Shown here: positions 10,348-61,608 of the stretch, one piece after another | How positions within the stretch are numbered: the stretch's first letter is position 1 | Layout: each line of letters opens with the position of its first letter | From: Hemiscyllium ocellatum | Taxonomy: Eukaryota | Assembly: GCF_020745735.1 (NCBI RefSeq) | Contig: NC_083429.1 | Location: forward strand, 30,857,877-30,921,876 | DNA length: 64,000 nucleotides | Direction: 5' to 3' | Notes under the pieces: model-generated | Told to the model about the DNA's origin: nothing | The model's database searches: none | What the model saw: the letters and a program-made list of their open reading frames with translations, nothing else | Program-made: the position numbers and the translations under genes

Positions 10348-10378
<31 letters not shown>

Positions 10379-22616: not shown

Positions 22617-22665
22617 ATGCAGCAGCTGCTGAAACTGTTTTTCATTTTGCAAACAGCTGTTCGAG
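22617..22665 (+). CDS. Copy A leader exon
   Basis: Same 49 nt as the gene B leader; donor G|GTAAGA. Confidence 0.75.
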
Positions 22666-23232
22666 GTAAGATGTTCTGCTCAGGACATTCACTCGGCGCT
22701 GGCGCTGTAGGGATAGGATTCCCCCTTTTCGGGTATTTCAGCTTTTCTATATAGTGTGGAACTGCAGAGAGAGCAAGTGAAACATCACCATGTCACTTGG
22801 ACAATTTCTGCACTGTTCAAATATCCACATCATGGTGGTTGGGTTAAACCTCCTGTGTAAAAGTTACATTCCAGTTGAGACGATACTTTGGATACTGATC
22901 GTGAATCCTAATGCTCATAGAATTCAGAATATTTAAAGTTTTTTTTTAAGATCTTCAGAAAAAGGGTGGCCTTTCTTTGCCAGTTGTTCAAGTTGATAGC
23001 AGCAGCTTCAGAAAACTGGAAACAAAGATCTCCAAAAGATTTTGAATCTTGTTTCATAAAAAGAAGCAAATTCAGACCAGGAAAAAGAAACCCACCATTT
23101 TAACAAAAACTAGGAAACAAACATCGCAAATCAGAGAAAAGACACGTAAAATTATCATGTTTTTCACAGATAATCCAATGGGTAGAAAATTTCAAATGAT
23201 GTTGATAATGGTGAACTGCTTTATTCCATCAG

Positions 23233-23577
23233 GTGAACCATTCATTGGAGAGGTGACTCAACCGCGTCTGCTCAGTGTCTTGACAGGAGAATCAGTCACA
23301 ATAAACTGTACATGGATTTATAATGGAACTAATCATGAATGGATCCATGCTAATTTCCAGAGGGAGCCACTACTGGGAAATAAGAACTCCTGCATTAAGA
23401 AGCTGACCTGTGTTCGCGATGTTACTCTGGGTAGTTTCGGTCGCTGTTTCACATCACTGGAGATTGAAAACGTTTCTATTGATCATTCTCAGAACAAATA
23501 TACCCACATGGTGAAGCTACCGAAAGTCTATCCTCCATTAGAGAGTAAAGGACAAGGAACAAGGTTGCAGATTTACG
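23233..23577 (+). CDS. Copy A Ig V-set exon; open, but F-strand Cys replaced by His
   Basis: 345 nt, 17 nt differences from 54498..54842 (hand count); YTHMV versus YICMV; splice sites intact. Confidence 0.85.
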
Positions 23578-25344
23578 GTAAAGTATTTACATTTCAAGTG
23601 ATAAGTAGAAAGACATTGATGTACTGAAGAGTGACAGTACTGACTTTACATTCATGATGGATACAGCAACATTTGCACCAAATTATTTATGGAGTAATTC
23701 ATTATTAGCACACACATACAATATGGAGGAGACAGTGAGGACTGGAGATGCTGGAGAGTCACAGTCAAAACGTTAGACACTGGAAAAGCACAGCAGATCA
23801 GGCAGTATCTGAGGAGCAAGAGTGTGATGAAGAGCTTATGCTCAAAACATCGACTCGCCTGCTCCTCGGATGCTGCCTGACCTGCTGTGCTTTTCCAGCA
23901 CTGCACTTTTCCACATACAATATAAAACTACATTATTTAAAGCATTGCTAATGAGAAGAATATAAACTAATTCAGTGCTTGTGTTAATGTCTGAAACAGG
24001 TTGCATTTAAAATTCAATGCATATATCATTGTTCCATTATTTCACAAAACAGCCACAGAAATGAAATGAATAATGCAACAACATTTTAAGACAACAAGTG
24101 TCAGAAATGAACAGCAGCCCACACGGCATCGATGAGAGAAAACAGAAATGTTCTTCAGCAAATCAAATCATGCAATCATCAAACCACAATGAAATTAGAA
24201 ACTGCTGTGAGAAGTTGCAATGAAATATCAAACAGGGGATTTCAGAAAGTAAATGTGACAAAATCTCAAGTAAAGAGTACAGCGTCAGGCTGAAAAATCA
24301 TCCAGAGAATCACAGCTTGTTTACAGTGTAGTGTACCCCGGTTCCTGATACAGGAGGATTGATTCACTAAGGAATAATGAAACAGTGCAGAAGTGTGCTT
24401 TATTATGCCACAAATGCAGATGAAAATCTCAGACCTCAGAGAAACAATGAATTTTCAGAATATGTTTTTTTGATGATAATTATAGTTATTACGAATCTCT
24501 TTTCTTTGGGATAATTATTTTATTCCAAGTTTCATACCTTCAAGTGAACTATTTGAATCACATTTATTTTCTCTTGTTTATTCATTGATACTGTTGTGAG
24601 TGAATCATCACAAGTTACCTTTAATTGGGCCACTTATCAAGAATGCTCACAGTCAGTCGAGTGCTGAAAAATGGTCTAAACTTTATTGCATGTAGCAACC
24701 AAACCAAGACCTCTAATGTCAGCAAGTTAAGCCTCACAACCCAGTTGGCTATTATCTGCTTAATGATGGAACATGGTCAGATTTCACCAAGGTGTCTCTG
24801 GAACTGTCCATGGTTTCATCCTTATGCAGTGCTGTTCTTCAAAGTTCTGCTATGGGGGAGTTCTGATGTTTGATTCTTGTCAGATTTTTGTCCTTTGGTC
24901 TATTTGTGATGTTGCTGATGATATTTTGAAAATCCTTTCATCCAAATTGCTGGAAGTCTTTGTTACTTGTTACATTTGGCATTGACTGTCTGTTTGAAGA
25001 CACAGCTTTTCTGTGATTAACTCCTTAAATGCTGCAGGACAATCCTTGTCCTTTGTGACAATAGACCATCCAGTTACTCAAGCAGGTGTTAAAGCAGTTG
25101 TGTTCATGTGGTTTCAACTCCTAGGCACAGCTAATTGCTTTCAATTCCTGTAAAGATTTCTCCTTTTCCTTAATCATTTCTTCCTGACAGAATTATTACT
25201 GCTGTGTTCCATGTGCAATTGTTTTTTGTTGATTCATTCAATCCATGAACATTTATTAAAGGTCTAAATTTTATAATATCACAGCACTTTGAGCAAAACT
25301 GTTATCTTATTGGTTACATTGTCTACTTCAAATACACATACAGC

Positions 25345-26550
25345 ATGACTTTTCAGCACAGACATCTATTTCAAACCCACTGCTACCTGAACTACACCTC
25401 CTTCCACAGCCCCCCTACTGCCAAAACATTATTCCTCACTCCCAATTCTTCTGCCTCCACCATATCTGCTCCCAGGAGGAGAAATTCCACGCTGGACATC
25501 CCAGATGTCCTCCTATTTCAGGAACTGCAATTTCCCCTCCCAAGTGCTCCCTCGAGCACATCTCCTCCATTTCCTGCACCTCCGCTTTTGAACCCCACCC
25601 CTCAAACCGCAAAGCATGTAGACCCCCCGGCTCCTCCCCCAACCACCCCTGCCCACTAATATCCGGACATGGCATATTATCCTCTGCCATTTCCACCACC
25701 TACAGATAGACACCGCCACCAGAGATATATTTCCCTCCACACCCCTGTCTATATTCCACAAAGACAAATTCCTGAGCAAATCCCAATTCCGGTCTACACT
25801 CCCTACCAATTCACCCTCTACTCCTGGCTCCTTCCCTTGCTGCCGCAAGAAGTGTAAAGCCTGTGCCCACAGCTCCCCGCTCACCTGTGTCCAAGGCCCC
25901 AAAGGATCCTTCCACATCTGGCAGAGATTTTCCTGCACATTCAAACAACTCATCTACTGCATCTGTTGCTCTTCATGTGGTCTCCTCTCTATTAGGGAGA
26001 AAGAACGTCAACTCGCAGAGCAATTCAGAGAGCATCTCTGGGACATACACAGCCCCATTGCTCTGTGGCCAACCACTCTACCTCCCCCTCTCACTCCCCC
26101 AGTTATATGTCAGTCCTGGGCCTCCTCTACCTCTGAATCAAAGCTACCAGTCAACTGGAGGAAGAAAGTCTCAATTTCTGCCTTTGAATCCTTCAACCAC
26201 ACAGCATCAACATTGACTTCGCTAGTTCCCAAATTTACCCACCCCACACCTCATCCCGGATCCAACCCTCCAACTTGGCACCGTTGTCTTGACCTGTCCA
26301 CCTGTCCATCTTCTTTCCCACCTATCCCCTCCACTCTCCCCACCAACCTATCACAATTAGCCCCTACTTGCATCTACCCATCACCTTTCCAGCTACCTTC
26401 CCTCCAGCTGCATCCCCACCCCCACCCCTTATTTATCTCTCATCCCCATTCCCTCTCCAAACTCCTAATGAAGGACTTATGTCTGAATTGTCAACTCTTC
26501 TGCTCCTTGGATGCTGCCTGAATTGCTGTTCTTTTCTAGCTTTACACTTT
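25345..26550 (+). mobile_element. Degenerate Penelope-like element (RT C-terminus, GIY-YIG, pLTR)
   Basis: STDIYFKPT-like motif, GPKGSFHI.QRFSC and H.IYCI-like segments, ending in the pLTR family found across the window. Confidence 0.65.
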
Positions 26551-26661
26551 TCAATTATTTTCAGTGCATATCCCAATTCACACCAAATTCCTTCTAGCCA
26601 TAACCCGCTGATCAATACGGCCTCCCAGTTCATTAATGTCTTGAAATTTAAAGTTCTTCAA

Positions 26662-27870
26662 GGGAATTGAATTGAATTGAATTTATTGTCATGTGTACTG
26701 TGGCACAGTCTTGCAAGCAATCCAGGTAGATCATAGAGTTAAGTAGCAAAAACAAAATACAGGTACAGGTGAATGTTAAGAGTTTGTCAGTCCATTCAGT
26801 ATTCTAACAACAGCACAGTAGGAATTGTTTTGAAACTAGCTGGTGCATGTGTTCAGGCTTCTGTACCTTTTCCCTGATGGTAGAGGTTGTAGAAACAAAT
26901 TGACAGGGAGGGATGGATCTTGGAGAATGTTGGCGACCTTTCCTTGACAACGGGCCTGGTAGGTGGGTTCTATAGATGTGGGGTTAGCCTTTGTGATCAT
27001 CCAGGCCGAGTTCACCACTCTCTGTAACCGTCTCCGATCTTGAATGGTACAGTTGCCATACCAGGTAGTGATACATTCTGACAGAATGGCACACCTATAA
27101 AAGTTGGCAAGGGTATTCGCCATCATGCCAACTTTCGTCAGCTGCCTGAGGAAGAAGAGACGTTGTTGGGCCTTTGTAACCTGTGCGTTCACATGAAGAG
27201 TCCTAGAAAGTTTGTTGTGGATGACCATTCCCAGGAACCTGACACTCTTCACTTGTTTCATCTCTGTGCTGTAAATGTGCAGGGGGGCATGAGTAACATC
27301 CCACCGAAAGTCACTAATAAGTTTCTTGGTTTTGTTGGCATTGAGAGCTAGGTTGTTCTCAGTGCACTGTTTTTCCAGGTCTTCCACCTCCCGTCTGTAG
27401 TCTGTTTCATCGCCATCTGAGATTCGACTGACTATGGTGGTGTCATCAGCGATGTAAATGGCATTAGTCTGGTATTTGGTGATGCAGTCATGGGTATACA
27501 GTGAGTACAGTAGGGGGTTGAGTACACACTCCTGGGGGACTCCAGTGTTGAGTGTTAGTGAGGATGAAATATTGTCCCCAGTCTTCACTGATGGTGGCTT
27601 GTGGGTCAGGAAACTGAGGATCCAGTTGCAGAGAATGGAGTTTAGTCCAAGGTCATTAAGTTTCGTAATTAGCCTTGAGGGGATAATAGTGTTGAAAGCT
27701 GAACTGTAGTCAATGACTAGGATTCTTAAGTAGTTGTTCTTGGTGTCAAGATGTTCTAAGGAGAAGTGAAGGGCATGTGATATGGCATTTGACGTGGATC
27801 TGTTGGTCCAATAAGCAAATTGGAGTGAGTCAAGAGTAGTGGAGAGACTGGAGTTGCTCTCTCTGGCAGA
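26662..27870 (-). mobile_element. Rex1/Babar-clade LINE, RT-containing 3' part
   Basis: LDSLQFAY..NRST, DYSSAFNTIIP, TGVPQECVLNPLLYSLYTHDC, IADDTTIV, NNLALNANKTK; (CAATT)n 3' tail. Confidence 0.85.
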
Positions 27871-27924
27871 CTGGCTTTCAATTCTCCCCAGACCATCAGC
27901 ACTCAGTATCTCAGGGTTCTTTTC

Positions 27925-28820
27925 ATAAGACCATAAGACCATGACACAAAGGAATGGAAGAAGGCCATTCAGCCCATTGAGTCCACTTCACCATTCAATC
28001 ATGGCTGATGGACATTTAAATTCCACTTACCTGCACTCTCCCCATATTCCCTTAATTCCTTGCGAGATCAAGAATATATCAATCTCTGCCTTGAAGACAT
28101 TTAACGTCCCAGCCTCCACTGCACTCTGTGGCAGTGAATTCCACAGGCCCACCACTCTCTGACTGAAGTAATGTCTCCTCATTTCCATTCCAAATTGACC
28201 CCCTCTAATTCTAAAGCTGTGCCCTAGATCCTAGTCTCCCTGCCTAATGGAAACAACTTCCCAGCATCCACCCTTTCTCAGCCATGCATTACCTTGTAAG
28301 TTTCTATTAGGTCTCCCCTAAACTTCTTACCTCTAATGAATACAATCCCAGAATCCTCAGCCGTTCATCATATGTTAGACTTACCATTCCTGCGATCATC
28401 CGTGTGAATCTCCGCTGGACACGCTCCAGTGCCAGTATGTCCTTCCTGAGGTGTGGGGCCCAAAATTGGACACAGTATTCTAAATGGGACCTAACTTAAG
28501 CTTTATAAAGTCTCAGTAGCACATCACTGCTTTTATATTCCAACCCTCTTGAAATAAATGACAACAAACCACGGACTCAACATGCAAGTCAACTTTTAGA
28601 GAATTCTGGTCTAGCACTCCTAGATCCCTTTGTACTTTGGCTTTATGAATTTTCTCACCTTTTAGAAAATTTTCATGCCTGTATTCTTTTTTCTGAAGTA
28701 CAAGCCCTCACATTTACTCAAGCTGAATTTCATCAACCATTTCCTGGACCACTCTCCTAAACTGGCTAAATCTTTCTGCAGCCTCCCCACCTCCTCAGAA
28801 TTACCTGCCTGTCCGCCTGA
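27925..28820 (-). mobile_element. CR1 3' fragment
   Basis: CATAAGAC tail repeats and CR1 RT C-terminal similarity. Confidence 0.7.
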
Positions 28821-29860
28821 CTTTCAAATTTAACTACTTATTTATCTAGTGTTGACTTGCTTCACCATTGAAGATGGAGTTTCGTTTTTCTAGGGTCTTA
28901 ATTCTGGAAGTTTCTTCCTAATCTTCTCCAGCCCTTCTTCCTTCTCCTCGAAAACATGTTTAAAACAGGCTTCTTTGATGCTGATATTGATAATCTGTCC
29001 TCAAAACTATGTGTCTCAATGTCAAATGTTGATTCAATGTTGTGGTATGTAAGATACCTAGGGGAGGAGAGCAAAATCTCACATACCACCATCTGAAAAT
29101 TTATTTGGATATGAGAGTGCGATGTCAGGCACATTTTCGTGTACTGGCACTTTGTTCTTGACACCTTACTGTGAGTGAATTCATAAAATCCATCCTAAAA
29201 GAAATTTAACGGAAGAGACAGAGTGTAACCGGAAAAGAGGCATGCAAAGATTTTATGTCATTCTTTCCTCAAATGTACAGCTCCTGAGCTGAAGTTACGA
29301 TGGATAAACAAGAGAATTGCATGGAAATCCACGCCATTCTTCTTGAATATATAGATGTTCTGTTTTGTTCTGTTTTCTGGTTCGTACATAAATCACCAAC
29401 AGAGATATCGAAACTTAAACTACAATTGTGGTTAGTCTGTCTTGGTCATACTACCTCTGAATCACCAGAGTGAATATGAACAATCTGCAGATTGATATTA
29501 CGATATGGATCTAACCGAATGTTATAATTAGCTTGAGGGGCTGAATGAGGAATTCCTGTTTCATTCTGAATATTGTGCCGACCCAAGAATAAATCCTACA
29601 TCTCAGTGAAGAGCAAAAAAGTGAATCAACCCATTGGAAGTATTCTTACCACACCCAGAACAATGATGGGAGGAGGTTGTTTGTATAAAATAACCAGAAA
29701 GTTAACAACAGTTGCAAACTACATTCTTAGAGACCACAGGAGCAAATGTTCAGGGCCAGTTTCCTGTCCGTTATTTCCAGTAAGGTCAAGTTAAACAGGC
29801 AATAACCCAATTGGCAGGAAACCACAGTGGTTACTGCAGTTCACAAGGATAGGCTAATTA

Positions 29861-31764
29861 AAACATAAAACATAAACCATTACAGTAGACCAACACAGTA
29901 CAGGCCCTTCGGCCCTCGCTATTGCACCAACCTGTGAAAACAATCTGAAGCTCATGTAACCTACACTATTTCATTCTCGTCCTTACACCATTAGTAACTG
30001 AACTCCAGGATGAATATTTCCCATCAACCACCATCCTCTTCTCCTTTCAGCTAGCCAATTTCTGATCCAAACCACTAAATCCCCCTCAATCTCATGCCTC
30101 CGTATTTTGTGCAATAGCCTACTGTGGAGAACCTTATCAAATGTCTTACTGAAATCCATATACACCACATCAACCGTTTTACCCTCACCGACCTTTCTGG
30201 TCACCTTCTCAAAGAACTCAATAAGGTTTGTGAGGCACAACTTACTTTTCATGAAACCATGTTGACGATCCCTAATCAACTTATTCATTTCTAGATGATT
30301 ATAAATCCGATCTCTTTTAACCCTTTCCAACACTTTACCCACAACTGAAGTAAGGTTTACTGGTCTATAATTACCAGGGATGTGTCTACTCCCCTTCTTG
30401 AACAAGGGGACAATGTTTGCTATCCTCCAGTATTCTAGCACTATTCCTGTAGACACAGACGCCATAAAGATCAAAGCCAAAAGCTCGGCAATCTCCTCCG
30501 TGGTTTCCCAGAGAATCTTCGGATAAATCCCAAACAGCCCAGGGAATTTATCTATTTTTACACTTTCCAGAATTGTTAATCCCTTCTAGTCTAGTTTCCT
30601 GTATCTCAGTATTCTCCTTAACAATATTGTCTTTTTCTATTTTGAATATTAATGAAAAATATTCATTTAGTGCCTCCCCATCTCCTCTGACTCTACGTAC
30701 AACTTCCTACTACTATCCTTGATTGGCCCTAATCTTACTCTAATCATTCTTGTATTCCTGTTATACCTATAGAAAGCCTTCGGATTTTCCTTGCTCCTAT
30801 TTGCCAATGACTTCTCACGTCCCGTCCTGGCTCTTCTTAACTCTCTCTTTTGGTCTTTCCTGGATAACCGAGTACCTTAACTGAGCCATCACATCTCATC
30901 CTAACATGAACCTTCTTCTTCGTCTAGACAAGTGACTGCACTTCCTTAGTAAACTATGGTTCCCATGCAGCACAACTTCCTCCCTGCCTGACCAGTACAT
31001 ACTTACGAAGGATCCGCAGGAGCTGTTCCTTGAATAAGCTCCACATTTCAATTGTGCCCATCCTTTGCAGTTTACTTTCCCATTCTATGCATCCTAAAGC
31101 TTGCCTAATCACATTGTAATTGCCTTTCCCCCAGCTGTAACTCTTGCCCTGTGATATACCTATCCCCTTCCATCACTAAAGTAAACCTAACCGAATTGTT
31201 GTCACTATCACCAAAGTGCTCACCTACCTACAAATCTAACACGTAACTGGGTTCATTAGCCAGTAAAAAACCTAATGTGGCCTCGCCCCTTGTTGGCCTA
31301 TCTACATACTGTGTCAGGAAACCCTCCTGCACACATTGGACAAAAACTGACCCATCTAAAGTAGTTGAACTATAGCAGTCCCAGTTAATATTAAGAAAGT
31401 TAAGGCCCTAATAGCAACCAGCTGTCACTCTCGCTCCTATCAAGGATCATCTTTGCCAACCTTTCCTCTACATTCTGGAACTATTCAGAGGTCTACAGAA
31501 AACTCCCAACAGGGTGATCTCCTTTCCTGTTTCTAATCTTAGCCCATACTGCCTCAGTAGATGAGTCCTCAAACGTCCTTTCTGCAACTGTAATGCTGTC
31601 CTTGATTAACAATGCCACATCACCCCCATTTTAAACATTTTCTCTGTTCTTACTGAAACATTGAAATCCAGGAACCTGCCATAACCATTCCTGTCCCTGC
31701 TCTACCAATGTCTCTGAAATGGCCACAACATCGAAATCCCAGGTACCAACCCATGCTGCAAGTT
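29861..31764 (-). mobile_element. Internally deleted CR1 LINE (end of endonuclease, RT, tail)
   Basis: WRIANIVPLFKKG..PGNYRPVNLTSVVGKVLE, QHGFMK, CLTNLIEFFE, VDVVYMDFSKTFDKV; abrupt jump to the 3' tail near 29985. Confidence 0.85.
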
Positions 31765-31849
31765 GTAGCTACTTTATTTTCAATGTACTCATAAAGCTTG
31801 GGCAAAACTTCGGAAACTGTGCCTCAATTTGGAACTGTTTCATTTACAT

Positions 31850-32092
31850 AGTTGGAGGAAAGTATAGAGGAGATGTCAGAGGCGGGTTCTTTACACAGAG
31901 AGCTGTGAGAGCATGGAATGCGCTGCCAGCAGCAGTTGTGAAAGCAAGGTCATTGGGGATACTTAAGAGACTGCTGGACATGCATATGGTGACTGAAATT
32001 TGAGGGTGCATACATGAGGATCAATAGTTGGCACAACATCATGGGCTGAAGGGCCTGTTCTATGTTGTACTGATCTATATTCTATATTCTAT
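31850..32092 (+). mobile_element. CR1 3' fragment
   Basis: FFTQRAVRAWNALP; (CTATATT)n tail. Confidence 0.7.
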
Positions 32093-32094
32093 AA

Positions 32095-36020: not shown

Positions 36021-36029
36021 GAAGGTACA

Positions 36030-40281: not shown

Positions 40282-40584
40282 AACTCCCTGAAATTTCCAT
40301 TGTAGATGGTAGTTTGGTTGCTGGGCAAAAGTCTATCCTGACCTGCCCTGCCTAGGAGTTGGACTCTGAGAACATCTCCTTTACCTGGACCTTTAGTGCA
40401 ACAAACATGATGACAAACATCACTGTCCCAAACCTGAAAGGAATGGTTAATGGTAAACCTGTTGCCACCAGTGAATTTGAGATCATTTCTCAAGTGGCTG
40501 ACCATGGAACTCTCTGTACATGTCAGATAAATCATATTACTTTCAAAAAGCCAGTAATAAAAAAGATCAATCTAGATGTTATGT
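40282..40584 (+). pseudogene. Paralogous C2 exon 3 with in-frame TAG
   Basis: 303 nt, 43 differences from 57624..57926 (hand count); TAG at 40353..40355 where gene B has CAA; splice sites intact. Confidence 0.85.
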
Positions 40585-41568: not shown

Positions 41569-41889
41569 ATGTTCCACAATTTCTCACAATAACATACTGG
41601 TTAAACCGCAGTGATATTTACCATACAGGGACCAGTAACTCCATCACTGTCAATACAAATTCATCACTGCAATTGAGATGCTCTGCATATAGTAACACTG
41701 CCTCGACTGTGATCTGGCTAAAGGATGGGGAAAAGTCCACTGAAATGGTACAAATGGCAACTGGATTACACAGCTCAAAATTACAGAAAATTAATTTCCA
41801 GTTTGAAGATGCAGGAATCTATTGGTGTATGACGAACAAAAGTTATGGTTGGAGAAATGCAAGTGTTTGGTTGAAAACTGTTCAAAAAG
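41569..41889 (+). pseudogene. Paralogous C2 exon 4; open frame, part of the disabled copy
   Basis: Acceptor TTTAG; LRCSAYSN...TVIWLKDG...DAGIYWC...SYGWRN; donor G|GTATGT; about 50% aa identity to gene B exon 4. Confidence 0.8.
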
Positions 41890-42602: not shown

Positions 42603-42704
42603 GTGACATGTGGTTGTGGATTTTGATTGGGTGATCCATTGCTGTTGCTGCATTCATTTTGATTCTAACCACACTAAGCTGCTTAGTTAATTGCTGAATA
42701 ACAG
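42603..42704 (+). pseudogene. Paralogous TM exon with two in-frame TGA codons
   Basis: Acceptor TTTCTTTCAG, donor G|GTAACG, 102 nt and phase 1 like the gene B TM exon. Reads GDMWLWILIG*SIAVAAFILILTTLSCLVNC*IT; TGA at 42632 and 42695. Confidence 0.75.
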
Positions 42705-44180: not shown

Positions 44181-44221
44181 AGGAGACAGGATTTGTTGGA
44201 ATTAATCCTTTGGAAGATTAA
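44181..44221 (+). pseudogene. Candidate short terminal cytoplasmic exon (E-ETGFVGINPLED*)
   Basis: Acceptor TCAAATGCAG, conserved in the paralogous block at 20178..20187; phase-1 frame closes after 13 residues; lies downstream of the TM exon. Confidence 0.35.
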
Positions 44222-52286: not shown

Positions 52287-52484
52287 CTGAAAATGTGTTG
52301 CTGGAAAAGCGCAGCAGGTCAGGCAGCATCCAAGGAACAGGAGATTCGACGTTTCGGGCATAAGCCCTTCTTCCTGAAAGGTCGAATCTCCTGTTCCTTG
52401 GATGCTGCCTGACCTGCTGTGCTTTTCCAGCAACACATTTTCAGCTCTGATCTCCAGCATCTGCAGACCTCACTTTCTCCTTTT
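52287..52484. mobile_element. Hairpin-forming inverted pLTR dimer insertion inside a CR1 fragment
   Basis: 15-nt TSD CATTCTTGTA(A/G)CTTG at 52272 and 52485; same architecture as 46914..47103. Confidence 0.85.
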
Positions 52485-52786
52485 CATTCTTGTAGCTTGT
52501 AAATGTCACCTTATCCAGTCATCCCAGCCTTCTATTGATTTTGAAAACCTCAATCTGATGTTCCCTCAGTCTGCTTCTTTCCAGGGACAACTGCCCCAAC
52601 ATTCCAATCTGTCCTTATCGCTGGCATTTCTCATTCCTGCAACAATTATTATAAACCGTTTCTGCACTCCCTCAAACACATTCACATCCATTCTGTGATA
52701 TGGTGTACACAACTATACGCAATACTCCAGCTGATGTCTAAAAGGAGACTTGTCCAAGTTCAAAATCGCTTTGCTCTTGTATATTA

Positions 52787-52915
52787 TTCCTGAAGAAGGG
52801 CTTATGCCCGAAACGTCGAATCTCCTGCTCCTTGGATGCTGCCTGACCTGCTGCGCTTTTCCAGCAACGCATTTTCAGCTCTGATCTCCAGCATCTGCAG
52901 ACCTCACTTTCTCCC
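52787..52915 (+). mobile_element. Short Penelope pLTR-derived element (second family) with a hammerhead-like motif
   Basis: AUUC-CUGAAGA-A-GGGC(UUAU)GCCC-GAAACGUC-GAAU, then the common pLTR body. Related copies at about 13560, 15905, 18745, 19270, 19805, 23730, 26465 and 57240. Confidence 0.7.
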
Positions 52916-53682
52916 CTTGTATACTATGCCTCTTTCAACATGGCCAAGAGCACAGGATGCTTTACTTACTGCTCTCTCCCCCCGTTCAGCTCCTTCAATG
53001 ATCTGTGCATATGTCCCCGAAAATCCCTCTGCTCCTGCTTCCTTTTTGAATTATAAGCCTTATTTTATATTGTCTCTGGGTGTTCTTCCAACTAAAGTGC
53101 ACCACCTTCCACTTCTCTGCGTCGAACCTCATCTGCCACCTCTCCGTCCGCTCTACAAATCTTTCAATGTTATTTTGAAGTTGCACTAGTCACAATTTAT
53201 AATTCTCCCAAATGCAGTGTCATCTGCAAACTTGGAAATTCTCCCCTGCATCCCGAGCTCCAGAACACCTGGAAATACAATGGATCCCCAGTGCCAATCC
53301 TGGGGAACTGCACTACGATGTTTCTTTAGCCTGAAAAATATCAAATTAATTATTACTGTTTTTCTGATCTAATTGATAGATCAGTTCAAGCAAATAAGGG
53401 GTTTTGTTTGTACAGTTAGAAATTAATAATCAATTTCACCCACGGTTTTAAGTCTTCTCATGTACCCAGACGGTTCTAACTGGAGTGTTCAAAGTGGGAT
53501 TTGAAATCATTCCGAGCAACATTCAAAGGCGGGATCAGCTACTGGGCAGCACAAATACAACGGCAGCATTCAGCTCCTTTTAACCCAAGCTTTCAGCTTT
53601 TAATTTCTCCAAAATAGTTCTCACACGTCACAACGTCAGAATTGTCTGAACACAGGTAGAGAGGGGAAAAAAAACCTCTTCA

Positions 53683-53770
53683 CTTCCCACGTAACTTCCT
53701 TCCTGACAGCAGCTAAAACCCATGGCATTCCGCAGTTGCTGCCGGTTTCGAGCTGAAATATAAATTATTC
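53683..53770 (+). promoter_or_regulatory. Putative promoter of gene B
   Basis: CACTTCC and ACTTCCTTCCTG motifs plus TATAAAT; near-identical to 22420..22510. Confidence 0.35.
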
Positions 53771-53879
53771 CCCGGGCGGGGCATCTGGACTGATGTCTGA
53801 AACCCTCTCAAGGTCAACACTCTTCCTGCTTCAGGTCTGGAGCTGAAACAGTTTTCAGAACGTTCAGAAACTCTGAAAG

Positions 53880-53928
53880 ATGCAGCAGCTGCTGAAACTG
53901 TTTTTCATTTTGCAAACAGCTGTTCGAG
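53880..53928 (+). CDS. Gene B exon 1, signal peptide (MQQLLKLFFILQTAVR-G)
   Basis: ATG at 53880, hydrophobic core, donor G|GTAAGA, phase 1; identical to 22617..22665. Confidence 0.8.
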
Positions 53929-56900
53929 GTAAGATGCTCTGCTCAGGACATTCACTCGGCGCTGGCGCTGTAGGGATAGGATTCCCCCTTTTCGGGTATT
54001 TCAGCTTCTCTATATAGTGTGGAACTGCAGAGAGAGCAAGTGAAACATCACCATGTCACTTGGACAATTTCTGCACTGTTCAAATATCCACATCATGGTG
54101 GTTGGGTTAAACCTCCTGTGTAAAAGTTACATTCCAGTTGAGACGATACTTTGGATACTGATCGTGAATCCTAATGCTCATAGGATTCAGAATATTTAAA
54201 GTTTTTTTTAAGATCTTCAGAAAAAGGGTGGCCTCTCTTTGCAAATTGTTCAAATTGATAGCAGCAGCTTCAGAGAACTGGAAACAAAGATCTCCAAAAG
54301 ATTTTGAATCTTGTTTCATTAAAAGAAGCAAATTCAGACCAGGGGAAAAAAAACACCATTTTAACACAGAAAACTAGGAAACAAACCACCGCAAATCAGA
54401 GAGAAGACACATAAAATTATCATGTTTTTCATAGATGATCCAATGGGTAGAAAATCTCAAATGATGTTGATAATGGTGAACTGCTTTATTCCATCAGGTG
54501 AACCATTCATTGGAGAGGTGACTCAGCCGCGTCTGCTCAGTGTCTTGACAGGAGAATCAGTCACAATAAACTGTACATGGATTTATAATGGAACCAATAA
54601 TGAATGGATCCATGCTAATTTCCAGAGGGAGCCACTACTGGGAAATAAGAACTCCAGTAATAAGAAGTTGACCTGTGTTCGTGATGTTACTCTGGGTAGT
54701 TTCGGTCGCTGTTTCACATCACTGGAGATTGAAAACGTTTCTTTTGATCATTCTCAGTACAATTATATCTGCATGGTGAAGCTACCGAAAGTCTACCCTC
54801 CATTAGAGAGAAGAGGACAAGGAACAAGGTTGCAGATTTACGGTAACGTATTTACATGACAAGTAACAAATAGAAAAACAGTGATAGTACTGAGTTTTCA
54901 TTCATTACGGACACAGCAACATTTGCATCAAGCAATAAGAACATTCAATATCAGACAAAACTATTCAAACAAGCTATTGCTAGCTCAAAAAATGCAGGAA
55001 GTATTCATTGCATGTTTGTAATATTGTTCTCTGAATCAGGTTTGTGATATCTCACCACTGTGAAATTAATGGGGATATATAAAGTTAAGGTTCAGGTTAT
55101 AGTCCAACAGGTTTATTTGGAAGCGACATTTAAACCAACACCGGCATCTCCAAATCATGGAGATATATAGGCCATCACTGATATAAATTTTGCATTTCTG
55201 CCACATTCATTACCTATTCTATTTATTCCATAAGGTATTACCTCCCTCGATTTTATGGAAATTCCTTAAGCTTTATACCTGTTTATCTTTATATGCTCAT
55301 GTAGCTTTTCACAACTTTGTCATCCATTGCTTTGCAATTCCATATAAAATTGAGTACATCTGAAGTTGTTCTACTATTTCAAATGAAAACCAATTATACG
55401 GAATCGATATTTTTTTAACACAGCTAGTAAATGTTGAAAATAGAAAGCCAGTTATTCTGTAAAAGAGGTAGATCTATGGTTTGTTTTAAACCCTTCATCA
55501 AAACCAAATGACATATCAATAGACTACAAATAAATTGGACAAAGCTGTGATAAACTATAAGGATATATCAAATAGAGATTTCAGAAAGTGATTGTGAGAA
55601 TTTCTGTGTAAAGAATGCAATTTCAGGCTAAAAAGGGTTTTCGCAGGAATCACACCCTGTTTTTTGTACTTAATGACATTATATAATATTGATCTAGACA
55701 CAGGAGAGCAATGCCCTAAAGAATAACAAAAAAAGTGTGCAACAATATGTCTTATTATGTCACATATGAAATGAGAAACTTAGTTTGCAGAGAAACAATA
55801 AATTTTGAGGATAGTTTTGTTGATATTATTCACAGTCATTTATGATTCTCAAAAAATTATTTGGGATAATTATTTTCCTCTTGAGTTTCATACCTTGCAG
55901 TGTACTATTTGTGTTGTTATTTTTCTGCTAGTTGTTAATTGACACTCCATAAAAATATTTTATTAATTACATTGTCCAAAGTTATTGCACAAGAAAAGCT
56001 CATACTCCATTAACCTATCAACCATGTGCTCACTGATCAACCCTACTTCCCAATTCTTCAATGCCAAGAATTCTAAATGTTCATTCCTTTTTTCAAATCC
56101 CTCATTGACCAGACCCTCTCTATCTCGGTGATTTTCTCCATCCCAACAATACTCAGATTCTTACATTTCACTTGTTTACCTTGAGTTGCTTTGCCTCACC
56201 ATTGGCAGCTGTATTTTCAACTGCCCAGAATCTGAATTCTAAAGATTTCTCCCCAAACGTCTTATTTTTTAATCTCTCCTCTATTAAAATTCATTCAAAA
56301 CAAACCTCTTTGGTGAAGCTAATGATCTCTTGGCTTCATAGCTATATGCCTCAGTGTCAAATATGTCTAGTATTATTCTGTGAGATACATAGGAGGTTTT
56401 GCTTTATTAAAGGTGCTGTATTATTATAAGTGGGAATAATGTGAAAACCCCTATTGAAATCAATGAAAACACCTGGAAAGAAGCCCACAATACTTGACTC
56501 ATGATTATGACATGTGAATAAAAAGAGCATAAACTCACACACCACCAACTAAACGTTAGCTCAGGACTCTGAATCACATATAGTTTTGTGTCTTGACCCA
56601 CTGTTCCATTAGTGACCGATGTGTGATATGTTTTTGGTCTGCAGACCAATTAGTGCTGAGGATATCCTCTGAAGGCATAGCAACAATGTAAAATTTGAAA
56701 GAGACTCTGCCTGACAGACTATCATTGTGCAGTGGGAGCCACAAAGAGATTGGTGCTCAAAAAGAGATGAAGGGTTGGCTCTATGATGCACTAGGATGAT
56801 GCCTGAGCTGGTAGTTGAATTCTACTAAAGGACAGATTTTTTTCAACACTAAGTAACATTGATGAAGCCTTACATATAACATGTGATACTGAGGCAAATT

Positions 56901-59900
56901 GTAAATTACACACAATTTCTGTCCAATGATATTATTGATTGGAAGCCAGTAGCAGTATCATGAAGATTTCCAATAGCTTCAGTGTCTTCAGCTCTAACTC
57001 CTCTAAATGGCCTTGGACATTCCTGTATGTGTGCCTGTTGTTGATGTCACTACAGTAGAACTACAATATGTAGCCCCAGGGAAATGGGCCCAAAACAGCT
57101 GTTCACAGGCAAACATGAAGAAATGTTACAAAGAGTGACTGAAATATACAATCGACAATTTTGGAAGCATGTTACATTGACCTGGTGCTAATCTCAGCAA
57201 GGAATCTGAAAATGCGTTGATCAACATAAACTCATTTAGGAGGAGAAAGTGAGGTCTGCAGTTGCTGGAGATCACAGCTGAAAATGTGTTGCTGGAAAAG
57301 CGCAGCAGGTCACGCAGCATCCAAGGAACAGGAAATTCGACATAATGCACTATTGAGTTGTCTTACAGTGGCATGACAGTTACCTTATAAGTAAAAGAGA
57401 GGATAGGGATGTGGTATGTGAGTCATTCTGACCAGACAATTGCTATCAAAAAATTGCACTGAAAGCTCCTGACACAGCAGCAAGGTAAAATGATATTAGT
57501 GTAATTCTCTAACACACATTTTGATTTTTGATTCCTTTAACCTAGACAAAAAGCTACTTAACTACAGATGTGTCACTATTTTACCAAAATGACAAATTGT
57601 GTTTCTTTTCTTCTCTATCTCAGAAATGCCTGAAATTTCCATTATTGGTGGTAGTTTGGTTGCTGGACAAAAGTCTGTTCTGACCTGCTCTGCCCAAGGG
57701 TTGTACTCTGAGAATATCTCCTTTACCTGGACCTGTAATGGAATAAACATGATGACAAACATCCCTGTCCCAACCTTGAAAGGAATGGTTCATGGTAAAC
57801 CTAATGCTACCAGCAAATTTGAGATCATCCCTCAAGTGATTGATCATGGAACTGTCTGTACATGTCAGATAAATCATGTTACTTTTAAACAGCCATTAAC
57901 AGAACGGATCAAACTAGATGTTAAGTGTGAGTATGATCTTTAGCATTGTTACCATTTCACAAAAGGTTATGATAAATATATTTACTTTAGATTTTGTCTT
58001 CCTCTTTTTATCTCCTCATCAGTCTCTGCTTACAACTGTGCCATACCCCATACTGTATTGTGAATTTCCCCCGTGTCCGTTTGTCTGTGGTTCCAGATCA
58101 AGTCCCTTCACACTGTTTTGCCTCGTACTAAAGTATTTCTGAATATGCCTTCCATCACCTGACCCATCAAAAATGCCAGTGTAACAGCTTCGTGCTTATC
58201 ACCAAATTTCAGTAATGTCTGTCCACTCACATCTCTGGCATGTTTTGCCCTTTATCTTTATTACCCCTCTTATCTATCCCGTAAAAGCTCCATGCTCTCT
58301 CACCTTTCAAACCTCCACTTATTTTATTGAAACAGAGAAAACAGGAACAAGAGTAGGCCACTGAGCTTGCTTTGCCATTCAATAATCCCTTCAAAAGCTT
58401 TTTGCACTGAGCAGTTTCTCATCTTTGATGATTTTGACCTTCATTGCATTCTTGACCTTTCTCCACCGATTTCACTGCCCTCATGTTGTCTGTTAGCCTT
58501 TCAATTCTGTATATTCCACAATCCATATTCACAGTTGCCAGTCACACTTTCCTGTCTTATGTAACCTCCCTATTTCCCTATCTCGATCACAGGCAATGTA
58601 ATCTCATATTATTTACTTGTATCGCACAATATGTCCACCTTATTTCCACTTCCAGTCTGGTAACCCAATCCTTCTTTTATGGAGAAACGTTCACTTTCGG
58701 TATTGCAATGGCAGTTCCAACTCCTCATTGTCCAAACTTTGTCCTTACATTATTTATCTATTTATGCAGCCAAAAGTCTGATCAGTTATTCCTTCAACTA
58801 TGCCTTTGATGATTATCTTCTCAATACTGTTTTCCACCTTGGTGGTTTCGACAAAGCACCTTCACTGCTTTAAATCCAAAAGGTACAGGTACAAACACAT
58901 AAAATGCACAATTTGTTCAGCTATTCATTGTTAAATGTGATGGCGTCACCATTTCTCAAAAATCTACGTGTCTTCCAATTCCCTTTCTTCTGCGTCAAAC
59001 TATGTCCATCTTTCATATTGCTCCTTGTTTGAACTTTTTCAATTGGGTTTCAATGCCACAGCATGGAATTAAGCCGAATGACAGTCACAAATAACATCGT
59101 TTGTATCTCTCACTCTGGTGTACTCCTCCACTTCAACCTTGTCAACCTTCATGAAGCATGTGACAGCAGCCAGCCACACTAGACTCCTCAAATAGCTTTC
59201 CTCTTTTAGCTAGGTTAGTGTAACTGCCTTCACTTATGCTCACTTGTATCTGTTCTACACCATTATTTCTGGTATTCTCATGAATCTATCTTTGAATTTC
59301 TCCCATCTCTCACCGACACTGCTGACATTATCCTGAGAAACAATGTTAACTTCAAATGTATGCTAACAATATCCAAATTTGGATTGCCATCGCTCACCTA
59401 ACTCCCCCGTGTCCATTTTTTTTTAGTGGTCTACATATCTGAGCTCCAGTTCTGAAAGGGCTGCAATAACCTCGAATTAAAAATTTGAAAGACTTGATTC
59501 CAAGTTTATTAAATTCCATCTATCTTCCCTGATCATTGCCTCATTTTGTTCTATTTTATGCTGACAAGAGTCAGCAGTCCACTCCTGTATCCTTTCCATC
59601 AGAATGACATCTTACTCACAGACTGGTAATATTGTCCATCTCTACTATATATATATATATATATATATATATCCTAACCACACCAAGTTCCACACTCCCA
59701 TGGTGTCACTGCTTACTAACTTTCTTTGGTTTCTAATTCGCCAATCTCTTGATTTTAAAATTCTCATCCTTGCATTCCACTGACTCCGCAGCCTTGTTTC
59801 ACCCCAGCTTTACAATCTCTTACAGCTCTACATCCCTCTAACTTTACCCTCTCCAACCCATAATTGATGCAAAGTCTGCAAGATCACAGAATCATAGAGT

Positions 59901-60407
59901 CATGCAATACAGAAGAGGGCCTCCATCAAGTCTGCACTAGCAAAAAAAATCTATGCTAAATCTTAACTCGTCCCACTTTCCAGCACTAGATCCATAGCCT
60001 GGAATGTTTGAAATTTCAAGTGTTCATCCAAATACTTTTTCAAAGTGCTTTACAAGATTATCTACCTCAACTGCCATCCCAGGTAGTGCAGGCTTCCACT
60101 ACCTTCTAGTAAAAACAAAAATTCCTCAAATCCCTTCTGAACTTCTGCATATTGCCTAAAAAATGGTCCCCTTCTTACTAACATTTTAACTAATCTGAAC
60201 AGCTGCTTTCTATCTGCTCTGTCACTGCCCCTCATAATCTAGCTAGTGTGCTTCCATTTAAACCTGTCGGACTGTAACCTGGTGTTGTGTGATTTTTAAC
60301 TTTGTACCCCAGTCCAACACCGGCATCTCCAAATCATGACCTCATAATCTGATACACCTTATATATCTTGTAGCTGTTAAAGTATGGAATTCCCTCAATG
60401 AACACCC

Positions 60408-60454
<47 letters not shown>

Positions 60455-61608
60455 TTAAGATAACCCTGTCAATCTGCTTCTTTGAACACATTTTTGGGTA
60501 TTGTTCCTTATACTTTCTTCCCTGGCTCAGTCGTTATGTTTGTCTGATTGGACTTCTGTAAAGCAATTTGAAATGTTTTCCTTTTATAGATGCATTATGT
60601 CAATGAAGAATCTTGTTAATTGGCCAGAATGTACCTGCATGTGTGAGAGTAATTATTTATACAAAAAATTAAGTTTGTATTTTCTTTACGTACAGATGGG
60701 CCACTGGAACCAACAATAATGTACAAGTTGAAAGACACTTACCATGTGAAGGCCAGTAACGGTGTAACTGTCCCCAGTAACTCACCTGTGGAACTGAGAT
60801 GCTCTGTGGATAGTAATCCAGTCGCCACTGTAATATGGCTGAAGAATGGAAAAAATTTAACTTCTATGATAGAAAACATAATTCGATTAAACAGTTCGAT
60901 ATTAACGATACCACACTTCCAGCCTAAAGATGCAGGAGTCTATTGGTGTGTGGCAAATAATAGCTATGGCTGGAGAAATGGCAGTGTTTCGTTGATGGCT
61001 TTTCAGAAAGGTAAGAATCCATGTACTAATGCAGGTGTAAATTGTTACAGAATAATTAATTTTACGAAATGGGAGCACAGATTGATTATAGTTAAGATTT
61101 TCTTTATTGATTTCAGAATTTGAAAAATTGAAATATTCATTTACTTAAAGCTGCAGTAAATAATACAGCCTATTCCAGATGGTTAAATATTTACAAATTA
61201 ATAACAATTGACTGTGAATCAATCAATTTTAGCTGTCTGTTTTTTCTGCAGTGGTTTGGAATGTAGTGCAAAGATAATAGACAACTAATATGATGCAGTT
61301 TTATCCATTAACTGCAGTTAGGCATAAAACTTGCAATGTTTTCTGAAGAAATTGACAATGTTTTGTCAAACAAAAATTTAAAGTTTGTAACCTTCTAACA
61401 TTCTCAGAAATATATCCAACCATTTCAAAGATTATACTTGATGTTTAAATTTTATGTCTGTTGCCATTCATCATTACTTCATTTTTAATTATTATTTCAT
61501 TCACAGATCATTTGTTGCTTTACATTCTATCTTCAATCATTGGTGTTATTGGGTTAATCGGTATGATAGCAATATACGTTTGTCTGATCTGGAAGAGACA
61601 ATTGAAAG
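53880..61608 (+). CDS. Gene B: IgSF type I membrane receptor, leader-V(J-like)-C2-C2-TM; join(53880..53928,54498..54842,57624..57926,60696..61010,61507..61608); cytoplasmic exons not located
   Basis: Five exons, each with AG/GT boundaries and phase-1 junctions (49+345+303+315+102 nt). They splice into one stop-free frame: MQQLLKLFFILQTAVRG-EPFIGEVTQPRLL...GQGTRLQIY-EMPEISII...DHGTVCTCQINH...-YGPLEP...LRCSVDSNP...DAGVYWC...-DHLLLYILSSIIGVIGLIGMIAIYVCLIWKRQLK. Confidence 0.85.
54498..54842 (+). CDS. Gene B exon 2, Ig V-set domain with J-like G strand
   Basis: Acceptor CCATCAG. B-strand Cys (INCTW), E-strand SLEIENV, F-strand YIC, G-strand GQGTRLQIY; donor G|GTAACG. Confidence 0.9.
55082..55156. 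mobile_element. 75-nt 5'-inverted Penelope terminus in gene B intron 2
   Basis: 13-nt TSD ATGG(G/A)GATATATA; ends in the family-1 terminus CCGGCATCTCCAAATC. Confidence 0.75.
57624..57926 (+). CDS. Gene B exon 3, Ig C2-type domain resembling Siglec domain 2
   Basis: Acceptor TATCTCAG; VLTCSA...FTW...PQVIDHGTVCTCQINH; donor T|GTGAGT; open frame. Confidence 0.9.
59646..59672. repeat. (TA)n microsatellite
   Basis: Direct reading. Confidence 0.95.
60241..60339 (+). mobile_element. 99-nt Penelope terminal fragment in gene B intron 3
   Basis: 11-nt TSD CCTCATAATCT; sequence matches the family-1 pLTR from AGCTAGTGTG to CATCTCCAAATC. Confidence 0.85.
60411..60452. repeat. (TC)n microsatellite
   Basis: Direct reading. 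Confidence 0.95.
60696..61010 (+). CDS. Gene B exon 4, Ig C2/I-type domain resembling Siglec domain 3
   Basis: Acceptor TACAG; LRCSVDSNPVATVIWLKNG...DAGVYWCVANNSYG; donor G|GTAAGA. Confidence 0.9.
61507..61608 (+). CDS. Gene B exon 5, transmembrane segment with no charged residue
   Basis: Acceptor TTCACAG; LLLYILSSIIGVIGLIGMIAIYVCLIW followed by basic KRQLK; donor G|GTAAAC. Confidence 0.85.

What the first reader, a model, noticed from the sequence alone, without database searches (positions are those of the whole stretch)
22617..61608. Candidate paired activating/inhibitory Ig-receptor locus in a cartilaginous fish
Seen: two plus-strand sets of leader-V-C2-C2-TM exons with matching phases. 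Leader and V are nearly identical, but the 102-nt TM exons are essentially unrelated. Gene B has a neutral TM; the other set has a TM with a stop at the position where an Arg could sit, followed by a candidate 13-aa tail with no tyrosine. Established: paired receptors (SIGLEC5/14, SIGLEC11/16, LILRA/B, PILRA/B, SIRP) share a ligand-binding end but differ in TM and tail, and the activating member often becomes a pseudogene. Inference: this is such a pair, and I do not recognise the family by name. The ITIM tail expected for gene B was not found in the window.
Basis: partly seen in the sequence, partly recalled or inferred. Interest (0 to 1): 0.8.

Follow-up and report, generated by a model that had tools for sequence, protein, structure and literature searches.

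The report
Shark paired receptor, dead activating twin
This epaulette-shark DNA holds the start of an intact "stop-signal" immune receptor gene and, just upstream, the decayed remains of its "go-signal" twin; the twin is still intact in three other shark lineages, so this is an old two-gene system that public databases mislabel as Siglecs.

Summary

- **Exon sets.** Two plus-strand five-exon sets (A 22617-42704, B 53880-61608) share splice phases. The layout is leader, VJ-type V, C1-set (not C2), I-set and a 102-nt TM exon.
- **Gene B.** B matches residues 132-486 of Hemiscyllium ocellatum XP_060702838 exactly. That model's 125-residue tail lies outside the window and carries TIYAFV, VSYADI and SEYSVV. 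These motifs are conserved in sharks and rays; VSYADI and SEYSVV also have close counterparts in paddlefish.
- **Gene A.** A is a pseudogene with three lesions: the canonical V Cys is His, a TAG sits in the C1 exon, and a TGA sits in the TM exon.
- **The TM stop.** That TGA falls in the column where intact relatives in Heptranchias, Pristiophorus and Scyliorhinus have Arg.
- **The "13-aa tail".** A's second TGA is the family's native stop codon, so this tail is not real.
- **Other species.** In Heptranchias the Arg-TM gene lies 9 kb upstream of the ITIM gene on the same strand, as A lies upstream of B here. Whale shark and zebra shark lack A's last three exons.
- **Pattern of evolution.** TM exons are orthologous across species, whereas ectodomains are homogenised within species.
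- **Family.** It is not a Siglec. Its V-C1 unit is closest to lambda light chains, UrIg2 and SIRPα.

The scan has noted similar paired VJ-C1 systems elsewhere in this genome.

The parts
22241..23681 (+). Block of gene A homologous to gene B's 53481-54931: upstream region, leader, intron 1 and V exon. It looks like a gene-conversion tract laid over an older duplication.
   Evidence: BLASTN gives 89.8% over 1471 columns. Divergence per segment is 26% at the 5' edge, 4% in the promoter/5'UTR, 0/49 in the leader, 3.4% in intron 1 and 5% in the V exon, then it collapses.
22617..22665 (+). Gene A leader exon (MQQLLKLFFILQTAVR, phase 1)
   Evidence: Identical to B's leader. The GT donor is present. 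It forms residues 1-16 of public model P0173.
23233..23577 (+). Gene A V exon. It is VJ-type with a GQGTRLQIY motif. The canonical F-strand Cys is replaced by His (CAC at 23505-23507).
   Evidence: Translation. The Pfam V-set score drops from 25.8 bits in B to 14.3 bits in A. This Cys is invariant in 21 family members.
40282..40584 (+). Gene A C1-set exon with an in-frame TAG at 40353-40355 (...LTCPA*ELDSEN...)
   Evidence: Sequence and translation. It is 73% identical in protein to B's C1.
41569..41889 (+). Gene A I-set exon, with an open reading frame
   Evidence: Pfam Ig_3, I-set and ig. It is 51% identical to B's I-set. In the domain tree it falls outside the orectolobiform B clade.
42603..42704 (+). 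Gene A TM exon: GDMWLWILIG*SIAVAAFILILTTLSCLVNC*. The TGA at 42632-42634 replaces Arg. The TGA at 42695-42697 is the native stop.
   Evidence: The alignment columns match the Heptranchias TM exon at 87%. Heptranchias has AGA (Arg) where A has TGA, and both share the terminal TGA. The protein alignment includes P0169, P0170 and P0177.
53880..53928 (+). Gene B leader exon
54498..54842 (+). Gene B V exon (VJ-type, with the canonical Cys-Trp-Cys pattern)
   Evidence: Pfam V-set at 25.8 bits, just under Pfam's cut-off of 26. It forms residues 132-246 of P0173.
57624..57926 (+). Gene B C1-set exon
   Evidence: Pfam C1-set at 30.7 bits. PDB hits are IgA constant domains, SIRPγ, UrIg2 and MHC II β. 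It is 77% identical to whale-shark P0002.
60696..61010 (+). Gene B I-set exon
   Evidence: Pfam Ig_3 and I-set. It matches P0158 residues 349-452 at 100%.
61507..61608 (+). Gene B TM exon (DHLLLYILSSIIGVIGLIGMIAIYVCLIWKRQLK), uncharged, phase 1 out. The tail exons lie beyond the window.
   Evidence: In whale shark the next coding exon lies about 35 kb downstream of the TM exon.
14376..14676 (-). Frameshifted relic of a third C1-set exon of the same family, with about 460 bp of the following intron (13725-14187, similar to 40848-41310)
   Evidence: tBLASTn hits fall in three different frames. DNA alignment. Self-BLASTN.

Best explanation
The window holds a tandem pair of genes from an old, unnamed immunoglobulin-superfamily receptor family of cartilaginous fish. 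The architecture is leader, germline-joined VJ-type V, C1-set, I-set and TM.

Gene B (from 53880 onward) is the intact inhibitory member. Its tail lies outside the window and carries one ITSM-type and two ITIM motifs. After tyrosine phosphorylation these would recruit SH2 phosphatases of the SHP-1/SHP-2 type; this step is inferred.

Gene A (22617-42704) is the decayed copy of the family's second member. In intact relatives that member has an Arg in the outer third of the membrane span and stops right after the span, with no tail. A receptor like that can signal only through a partner chain, most likely an ITAM adaptor with a membrane Asp, such as an FcRγ or DAP12 type. This too is inferred.

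A and B arose by a duplication older than the split between galeomorph and squalomorph sharks. Since then the TM exons have stayed distinct, while parts of the ectodomain have been homogenised repeatedly within each species. In this shark the homogenised part is the promoter-leader-V block.

The Arg-TM member has been lost in the orectolobiform sharks examined. In the epaulette shark it was lost through three point lesions. In whale shark and zebra shark its last three exons are missing.
For: **Shown**
- Exon structure and lesions.
- The first 486 residues of P0173 equal A's leader and V followed by B's V-C1-I-TM exactly, and a 125-residue tail with the three tyrosine motifs follows.
- The Chiloscyllium orthologues have a single V. 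They are 91% identical to B, and their genes span 53.5-55.5 kb. B alone would span the same length.
- Arg-TM relatives P0169, P0170 and P0177 align with Arg at A's TGA. A's TM is 59-67% identical to theirs and 33-37% identical to inhibitory TMs.
- In the DNA alignment of the TM exon (87% column identity), Heptranchias has AGA where A has TGA, and the terminal stop and the downstream GT are shared.
- In Heptranchias the Arg-TM gene (10001-24301) lies upstream of the ITIM gene (starting at 33376) on the same strand.
- In the domain trees V_A is sister to V_B. C1_A lies within the orectolobiform clade but outside both of its subclades. I_A lies outside the orectolobiform B clade. The Heptranchias and Pristiophorus pairs group by species.
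- In Rhincodon and Stegostoma the flanks of window 38.2-43.7 kb are collinear, but the segment holding A's C1, I and TM exons is absent.

**Inferred**
- Phosphatase recruitment by B's tail and adaptor pairing by the Arg-TM member, from general knowledge of ITIM receptors and of Arg/Lys-TM receptors.
Against: - No expression, binding or signalling data exist for any member.
- The ITIM tail is known only from a predicted public protein, and its exons could not be read here.
- The public gene model splices A's V exon onto B's V exon. If that is real, A's 5' part is not simply dead.
- Arg-TM members were found in only three species, and one of those models (P0177) is partial.
- I could not show that sharks express a matching adaptor.
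- The absence in whale shark and zebra shark could be an insertion or transfer in the Hemiscyllium lineage rather than a deletion. The age of the TM exon argues against that.
Confidence: 0.8

Rival explanations
1. One gene, not two. As in the public model (LOC132829591, 84.7 kb), A's leader and V exon are the true first exons of gene B. This would give a V-V-C1-I-TM-ITIM receptor, and A's C1, I and TM exons would be skipped relics inside a long intron.
For: Both annotated isoforms (P0173, P0158) contain V_A followed by V_B. The V exons are phase 1 at both ends, so the splice keeps the frame. A's promoter, leader and intron 1 are kept 96-100% identical to B's.
Against: V_A lacks the invariant Cys. 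B has its own identical leader exon with intact splice sites and near-identical upstream sequence. All orthologues have one V. The Chiloscyllium genes span 53.5-55.5 kb, which fits B starting at its own leader. Automatic models often merge tandem duplicates. This rival does not contradict the pseudogene status of A's 3' exons.
Confidence: 0.2
2. The Arg-TM member is not an activating receptor. It could be a tail-less decoy, a co-receptor, or a form that is released or degraded. In that case 'paired activating/inhibitory' overstates the system.
For: There are no functional data. The protein ends directly after the membrane span. It has been lost without replacement in three orectolobiform genomes. 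Other family variants lack signalling ends, for example Mustelus P0168, which appears secreted, and Rhinoraja P0005, which has a short tail.
Against: An Arg at one fixed membrane position, inside a TM exon that is 56-69% identical between the Arg-TM genes of three shark orders, implies selection for a polar membrane contact. From general knowledge, this is how FcαRI, NKp46, LILRA and OSCAR bind FcRγ.
Confidence: 0.15
3. These are true Siglecs, as the public names say (Siglec-8/12/13/14, MAG-like), and they bind sialic acid.
For: The whole-ectodomain fold search ranks CD22 d1-3, MAG Ig1-3 and CD33-related Siglecs first, at E about 1e-15 to 1e-17 and about 20% identity. From memory, the tail motifs resemble Siglec tails.
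Against: The V domain has the canonical B-strand Cys, Trp and F-strand Y-x-C, plus a J-like G-x-G-T motif. No Arg is invariant or nearly invariant in the V domain across 21 members. Domain 2 is C1-set. The V-C1 profile matches lambda light chains, UrIg2 and SIRPα, and no Siglec appears among the best 60. CADM, nectin and SIRPα score almost as well in the fold search, so that search only recognises a three-Ig rod.
Confidence: 0.07
4. Gene A is functional, and the stops are assembly errors or rare alleles.
For: All ten splice sites are intact and the I-set exon is open.
Against: There are three independent lesions in three exons, one of them a two-base change of the invariant Cys codon. The V-C1 intron has grown to 16.7 kb and is filled with LINE and LTR elements. 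Sister lineages lack the 3' exons altogether.
Confidence: 0.03

Closest known systems
SIRP family (SIRPα inhibitory, SIRPβ activating through DAP12)
   Same: It is a paired system with near-identical ligand-binding ends and opposite signalling ends. The V domain has a J-like strand and is followed by a C1-set domain. The V-C1 profile aligns to SIRPα d1-d2 as one stretch (E 5.9e-12). The C1 exon hits SIRPγ (E 8.7e-6). From memory, the tail has several tyrosine motifs of the same style (xSYADI, SEYSVV).
   Different: The third domain is I-set, not C1. The membrane charge is Arg in the outer third of the span rather than a central Lys. The Arg-TM member has no tail at all. Identity is only about 20%, and orthology is not shown. 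The ligand is unknown.
CD33-related Siglec pairs (Siglec-5/14, Siglec-11/16) and CD22/MAG
   Same: These are the best whole-ectodomain fold matches. They include pairs homogenised by gene conversion in which the activating member is often a pseudogene (general knowledge). They are also the source of the public names for this family.
   Different: There is no sialic-acid Arg. The V domain has the canonical Cys pattern with a J motif. Domain 2 is C1-set.
Non-rearranging VJ-C1 genes of sharks (UrIg, UrIg2; PMC12227049)
   Same: The VJ exon is germline-joined and followed by a C1-set domain. UrIg2 is among the top PDB matches.
   Different: UrIg and UrIg2 carry only C1-type constant domains (nine in nurse-shark UrIg2), and neither ITIM nor paired receptors are mentioned in the paper. 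The family here is V-C1-I with ITIM or Arg-TM ends.
Nectin / CADM (Necl) family
   Same: It has a V, C1-like, I/C2 three-domain ectodomain. Necl-4 gives the highest TM-score, 0.60.
   Different: There is no sequence-level match in the PDB searches. The tails and the paired organisation differ.

Membership tests
Paired activating/inhibitory receptor locus (functional class) | Two adjacent genes whose ligand-binding domains are nearly identical | tested here: met
   A and B lie on the same strand 11 kb apart. The V domains are 91% identical and the leaders are identical.
Paired activating/inhibitory receptor locus (functional class) | One member has ITIM/ITSM motifs in its tail | tested here: met
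   The tail of P0173 carries TIYAFV, VSYADI and SEYSVV. Its first 486 residues equal the window's exons. The tail exons themselves lie outside the window.
Paired activating/inhibitory receptor locus (functional class) | The other member has a basic residue in the TM and a short tail | tested here: met
   This holds in intact relatives P0169, P0170 and P0177. In this genome the Arg codon is TGA, so the gene is a pseudogene.
Paired activating/inhibitory receptor locus (functional class) | Opposite signalling shown (phosphatase recruitment against ITAM adaptor) | not testable with these tools
   This needs cell assays.
Siglec | Conserved F-strand Arg that binds sialic acid, in a V-set domain with a B-E intrasheet disulfide | tested here: not met
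   The invariant V residues are Q10, G19, C26, W37, C60, C72, L76, C92 and P101. The F strand reads Y-x-C. No Arg is invariant or nearly invariant in the V domain.
Siglec | C2-set domains follow the V domain | tested here: not met
   Domain 2 passes the Pfam C1-set cutoff and fails C2-set_2. In the model the putative C and D strands are 13 residues apart and D-E forms a tight hairpin, which fits C1 topology.
SIRP | V-C1-C1 ectodomain | tested here: not met
   V-C1 matches SIRPα d1-d2, but domain 3 is I-set.
SIRP | Orthology or synteny with SIRP genes, and CD47 binding | not tested
   No neighbouring genes could be read. Only the gene itself was listed within ±10 kb.
UrIg/UrIg2 | VJ followed only by C1-type domains, with no ITIM | tested here: not met
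   An I-set third domain and an ITIM tail are present.
Rearranging antigen receptors | Separate V and J segments with recombination signals | tested here: not met
   V and the J-like motif (GQGTRLQIY) lie in one uninterrupted exon in both copies.

The most novel reading that the evidence does not exclude
This VJ-C1-I receptor pair, whose inhibitory form reaches back to the common ancestor of sharks and ray-finned fish (paddlefish and arowana relatives), may represent the ancestral stock from which the SIRP and/or CD33-related Siglec paired receptors of tetrapods arose. Its head resembles an antigen receptor, and its stalk and multi-ITIM tail resemble those of Siglecs. That would link antigen-receptor-like VJ-C1 units directly to today's myeloid checkpoint receptors.
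Probability: 0.12. Interest if true: 0.75.

Novelty: new member of a known kind. Interest (0 to 1): 0.5.

Why it matters
Paired activating/inhibitory receptors are a hallmark of mammalian innate immunity and are thought to be driven by pathogens that exploit inhibitory receptors. Very few have been traced in cartilaginous fish.

This locus shows the full evolutionary pattern in sharks:
- signalling exons that are orthologous across species;
- repeated homogenisation of the ectodomain within species;
- loss of the activating partner in some lineages, by a different route in each.

It also shows that the public 'Siglec/MAG-like' names are misleading, and that the epaulette-shark gene model probably fuses a pseudogene's V exon to its neighbour. 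The intact pairs in Heptranchias, Pristiophorus and Scyliorhinus give ready material for testing adaptor use and ligand binding in a basal jawed vertebrate.

Tried and rejected
- **Positive selection on V.** dN/dS between V_A and V_B is 0.56 from 18 differences. By the counts the V exon (18/357) diverges only slightly more than intron 1 (19/562); no formal test was run. No claim is made.
- **Tail exons in 61.6-64 kb.** tBLASTn with six full-length relatives found none.
- **Word search limited to the Arg-TM region of P0169.** It found only P0169 itself and its inhibitory neighbour. The Scyliorhinus member emerged only from the full-length search.
- **DNA of the Hemiscyllium, Chiloscyllium and Scyliorhinus loci.** It was not available, or the proteins were not on record. 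I could therefore not see A's status in the nearest relatives or read B's tail exons.
- **Literature.** Five searches found no paper on this family. The UrIg2 paper describes a different family. I did not pursue CEACAM: no CEACAM appears among the listed PDB matches of the V exon, and the V keeps its canonical disulfide cysteines.
- **Fold search.** It could not discriminate between Siglec, CADM/nectin and SIRP.
- **Penelope-like elements.** I guessed this from motifs at 11.1-12.6 kb and 44.8-46.1 kb, but Pfam gave no hit.


Full report
**What is in the window**

Self-comparison and tBLASTn show two plus-strand copies of the same exon series. A broken third C1 exon lies on the minus strand.

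Reading the DNA gives five exons per copy, all with AG/GT sites and phase 1 at every junction.
- Gene A: 22617-22665, 23233-23577, 40282-40584, 41569-41889, 42603-42704.
- Gene B: 53880-53928, 54498-54842, 57624-57926, 60696-61010, 61507-61608.

**Domain types**

Pfam calls the first domain V-set (25.8 bits, just under the 26-bit cut-off). It calls the second C1-set (30.7 bits against a cutoff of 21; C2-set_2 fails). It calls the third Ig_3/I-set.

The C1 exon's best solved relatives are IgA constant domains, SIRPγ d3, UrIg2 and MHC class II β2. The third domain resembles contactin, DSCAM and MAG I-set domains.

An AlphaFold model of B's ectodomain has mean pLDDT 80. In domain 2 it shows a strand pattern that fits C1 topology: a 13-residue gap after the third strand and a tight hairpin between the next two.

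So the layout is leader, VJ-type V, C1, I-set and TM, not V-C2-C2. The V exon runs without interruption through a J-like GQGTRLQIY motif, so nothing rearranges.

**Species and public annotation**

A HMMER scan with B's C1 exon found close relatives with the domain at the same position.

The epaulette shark's own models are XP_060702838/9 (P0173 and P0158; Hemiscyllium ocellatum LOC132829591). They are named 'uncharacterized' or 'Siglec-8'. The first 486 residues of P0173 are exactly A's leader and V (131 residues) followed by B's V, C1, I-set and TM. This fixes the species.

It also shows that the public model threads A's V exon onto B's V exon. That model spans 84.7 kb. The single-V orthologues of two Chiloscyllium species are 91% identical to B and span 53.5 and 55.5 kb. 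That is the span expected if B starts at its own leader.

**Gene B is an ITIM receptor**

The 125 residues of P0173 that follow the TM exon are not encoded in the window. In whale shark the next coding exon lies about 35 kb beyond the TM exon.

The tail carries TIYAFV, VSYADI and SEYSVV. The same three positions are conserved in 15 or more shark and ray proteins. VSYADI and SEYSVV have close counterparts in paddlefish, VPYADI and SEYAVI.

Recruitment of SH2 phosphatases is inferred from general knowledge of such motifs.

**Gene A is a dead Arg-TM partner**

A has three lesions.
- The invariant F-strand Cys of the V domain is His (23505-23507).
- The C1 exon has TAG at 40353-40355.
- The TM exon has TGA at 42632-42634.

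Three intact relatives end in a TM very like A's.
- Heptranchias perlo P0169: ...LIWIFVIRFIAVAAFIFILTTLSCLVNC
- Pristiophorus japonicus P0170: ...IWSFIIRSIAVAAYILILITLNCLV
- Scyliorhinus canicula P0177: ...DTWLWIFIVRSISVAAFILILVTLSYLLTAE

In the alignment their Arg falls in the column of A's TGA.

The DNA alignment of A's TM exon with the Heptranchias exon has 87% column identity. Heptranchias has AGA where A has TGA. Both share the terminal TGC-TGA and the GT donor that follows.

The second TGA is therefore the native stop codon.

A's TM is 59-67% identical to Arg-type TMs and 33-37% identical to inhibitory TMs. B's TM shows the reverse pattern.

**The pair is old and conserved in order**

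In Heptranchias the Arg-TM gene (locus L001, 10001-24301) is followed on the same strand by the 498-residue ITIM gene, which starts at 33376. This is the same order as A then B.

Domain trees show ectodomains grouping by species rather than by type.
- The Heptranchias pair and the Pristiophorus pair are each sisters in the C1 tree, and the Pristiophorus pair in all three trees.
- V_A is sister to V_B.
- C1_A lies inside the orectolobiform clade but outside both of its subclades.
- I_A lies outside the strongly supported orectolobiform B clade.

Identity within each pair differs by domain and by species:

| Species | V | C1 | I-set |
|---|---|---|---|
| Hemiscyllium | 91% | 73% | 51% |
| Heptranchias | 59% | 85% | 76% |
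| Pristiophorus | 87% | 99% | 94% |

This is the signature of repeated gene conversion over different tracts, with the signalling exons kept apart.

In the window the converted tract covers about 22.44-23.6 kb. Divergence is 0-5% inside it. Older homology at 69-74% lies at both edges. I found no sign of positive selection in V (dN/dS 0.56).

**Loss in orectolobiform sharks**

The whale-shark and zebra-shark loci (L002, L003) are collinear with window 43.7-64 kb and with 36.0-38.2 kb. In the zebra shark these two blocks are separated by only 14 bases. The 5.5 kb holding A's C1, I and TM exons is absent, and no Arg-type TM exon is found in the 10 kb upstream of their B genes.

Because the TM exon is shared with distant sharks, a deletion in that lineage is the simpler reading. 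The Arg-TM partner has thus been lost by point lesions in Hemiscyllium and by deletion in Rhincodon and Stegostoma.

**What the family is**

A profile of the V-C1 unit matches lambda light chains, UrIg2 and SIRPα over both domains in one stretch. No Siglec appears among the best 60 matches.

Whole-ectodomain fold searches rank CD22, MAG and CD33-related Siglecs first, with CADM, nectins and SIRPα close behind. All are at about 20% identity. That says little more than 'three-Ig rod'.

The defining Siglec features are not met.
- There is no conserved F-strand Arg.
- The canonical B-strand Cys and F-strand Y-x-C are present.
- Domain 2 is C1-set, not C2-set.

UrIg and UrIg2 differ in having only C1 domains.

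I file the family as unnamed. It works like SIRP or Siglec pairs but is a member of neither.

**Mechanism and confidence**

What is shown:
- the anatomy of both genes;
- the three lesions in A;
- the tail motifs, through the public protein model;
- orthology of the TM exons;
- conserved gene order;
- the conversion pattern;
- the absence of A's last three exons in two related genomes.

What is inferred:
- B inhibits through phosphatases;
- the Arg-TM form activates through an ITAM adaptor. The Arg lies in the outer third of the span, as in FcRγ-coupled receptors (from memory).

Overall confidence is 0.8. The main open point is whether A's leader and V exon are spliced into B's transcript, as the public model claims.

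**Novelty**

Five literature searches found no paper on this family. The proteins are already predicted in public annotation under misleading names.

Earlier notes of this scan describe similar paired VJ-C1 receptor systems on other pieces of this genome. The kind of system is therefore not new here, although this V-C1-I family and its history appear to be undescribed.

I rate it as a new member of a known kind, with interest 0.5.

Noticed in passing
window 13725-14676, minus strand: A relic of a third C1-set exon of the same family. Its tBLASTn hits fall in three frames, so it is frameshifted. About 460 bp of the adjoining intron survives. No V, I-set or TM exon lies nearby. It is probably the remnant of an inverted partial duplication.
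   Followed up: partly
window 22617-23577 and 54498 (public model XP_060702838/9): The public epaulette-shark gene model joins the pseudogene's leader and Cys-less V exon to the neighbour's V exon. This gives a 611-residue double-V protein, whereas all orthologues have one V. It is probably an annotation merge of tandem copies.
   Followed up: partly
window 23578-40281: Gene A's V-C1 intron is 16.7 kb, against 2.8 kb in gene B and 3.5 kb in Heptranchias. It holds LINE reverse-transcriptase ORFs (26836-27942 and 29983-30480, minus strand) and an LTR-retroelement pol region with integrase and RNase H (32.9-35.2 kb, plus strand).
   Followed up: partly
window 15905-16045, 18736-18827, 19283-19405, 23726-23900, 38582-38674, 46897-47106, 52286-52481, 52786-52914, 57240-57341: A short interspersed repeat of about 100-190 bp occurs in ten or more copies at 80-97% identity, in both orientations. 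One copy sits right where A/B homology ends after the V exon.
   Followed up: no
window 9827-10672 and 12559-13378: An inverted repeat of about 850 bp at 91% identity, rich in TG/CA-type simple sequence. It flanks ORFs at 11.1-12.6 kb that look like a retroelement by motif only; the two tried in Pfam (11455-12249 and 12335-12550) gave no hit. Similar ORFs lie at 44.8-46.1 kb on the minus strand.
   Followed up: partly
L001 13935-14114 (Heptranchias perlo): An extra partial C1-like segment, 77% identical to residues 153-212 of the Arg-TM protein, lies about 330 bp upstream of that gene's real C1 exon.
   Followed up: no
P0122 (Pristiophorus japonicus, 'sialoadhesin-like', 408 aa): A more distant V-C1-I relative also has an Arg at the same TM column. 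Its TM is otherwise different, and it has a tyrosine-free tail of about 60 residues. It may be a second charged-TM lineage.
   Followed up: no
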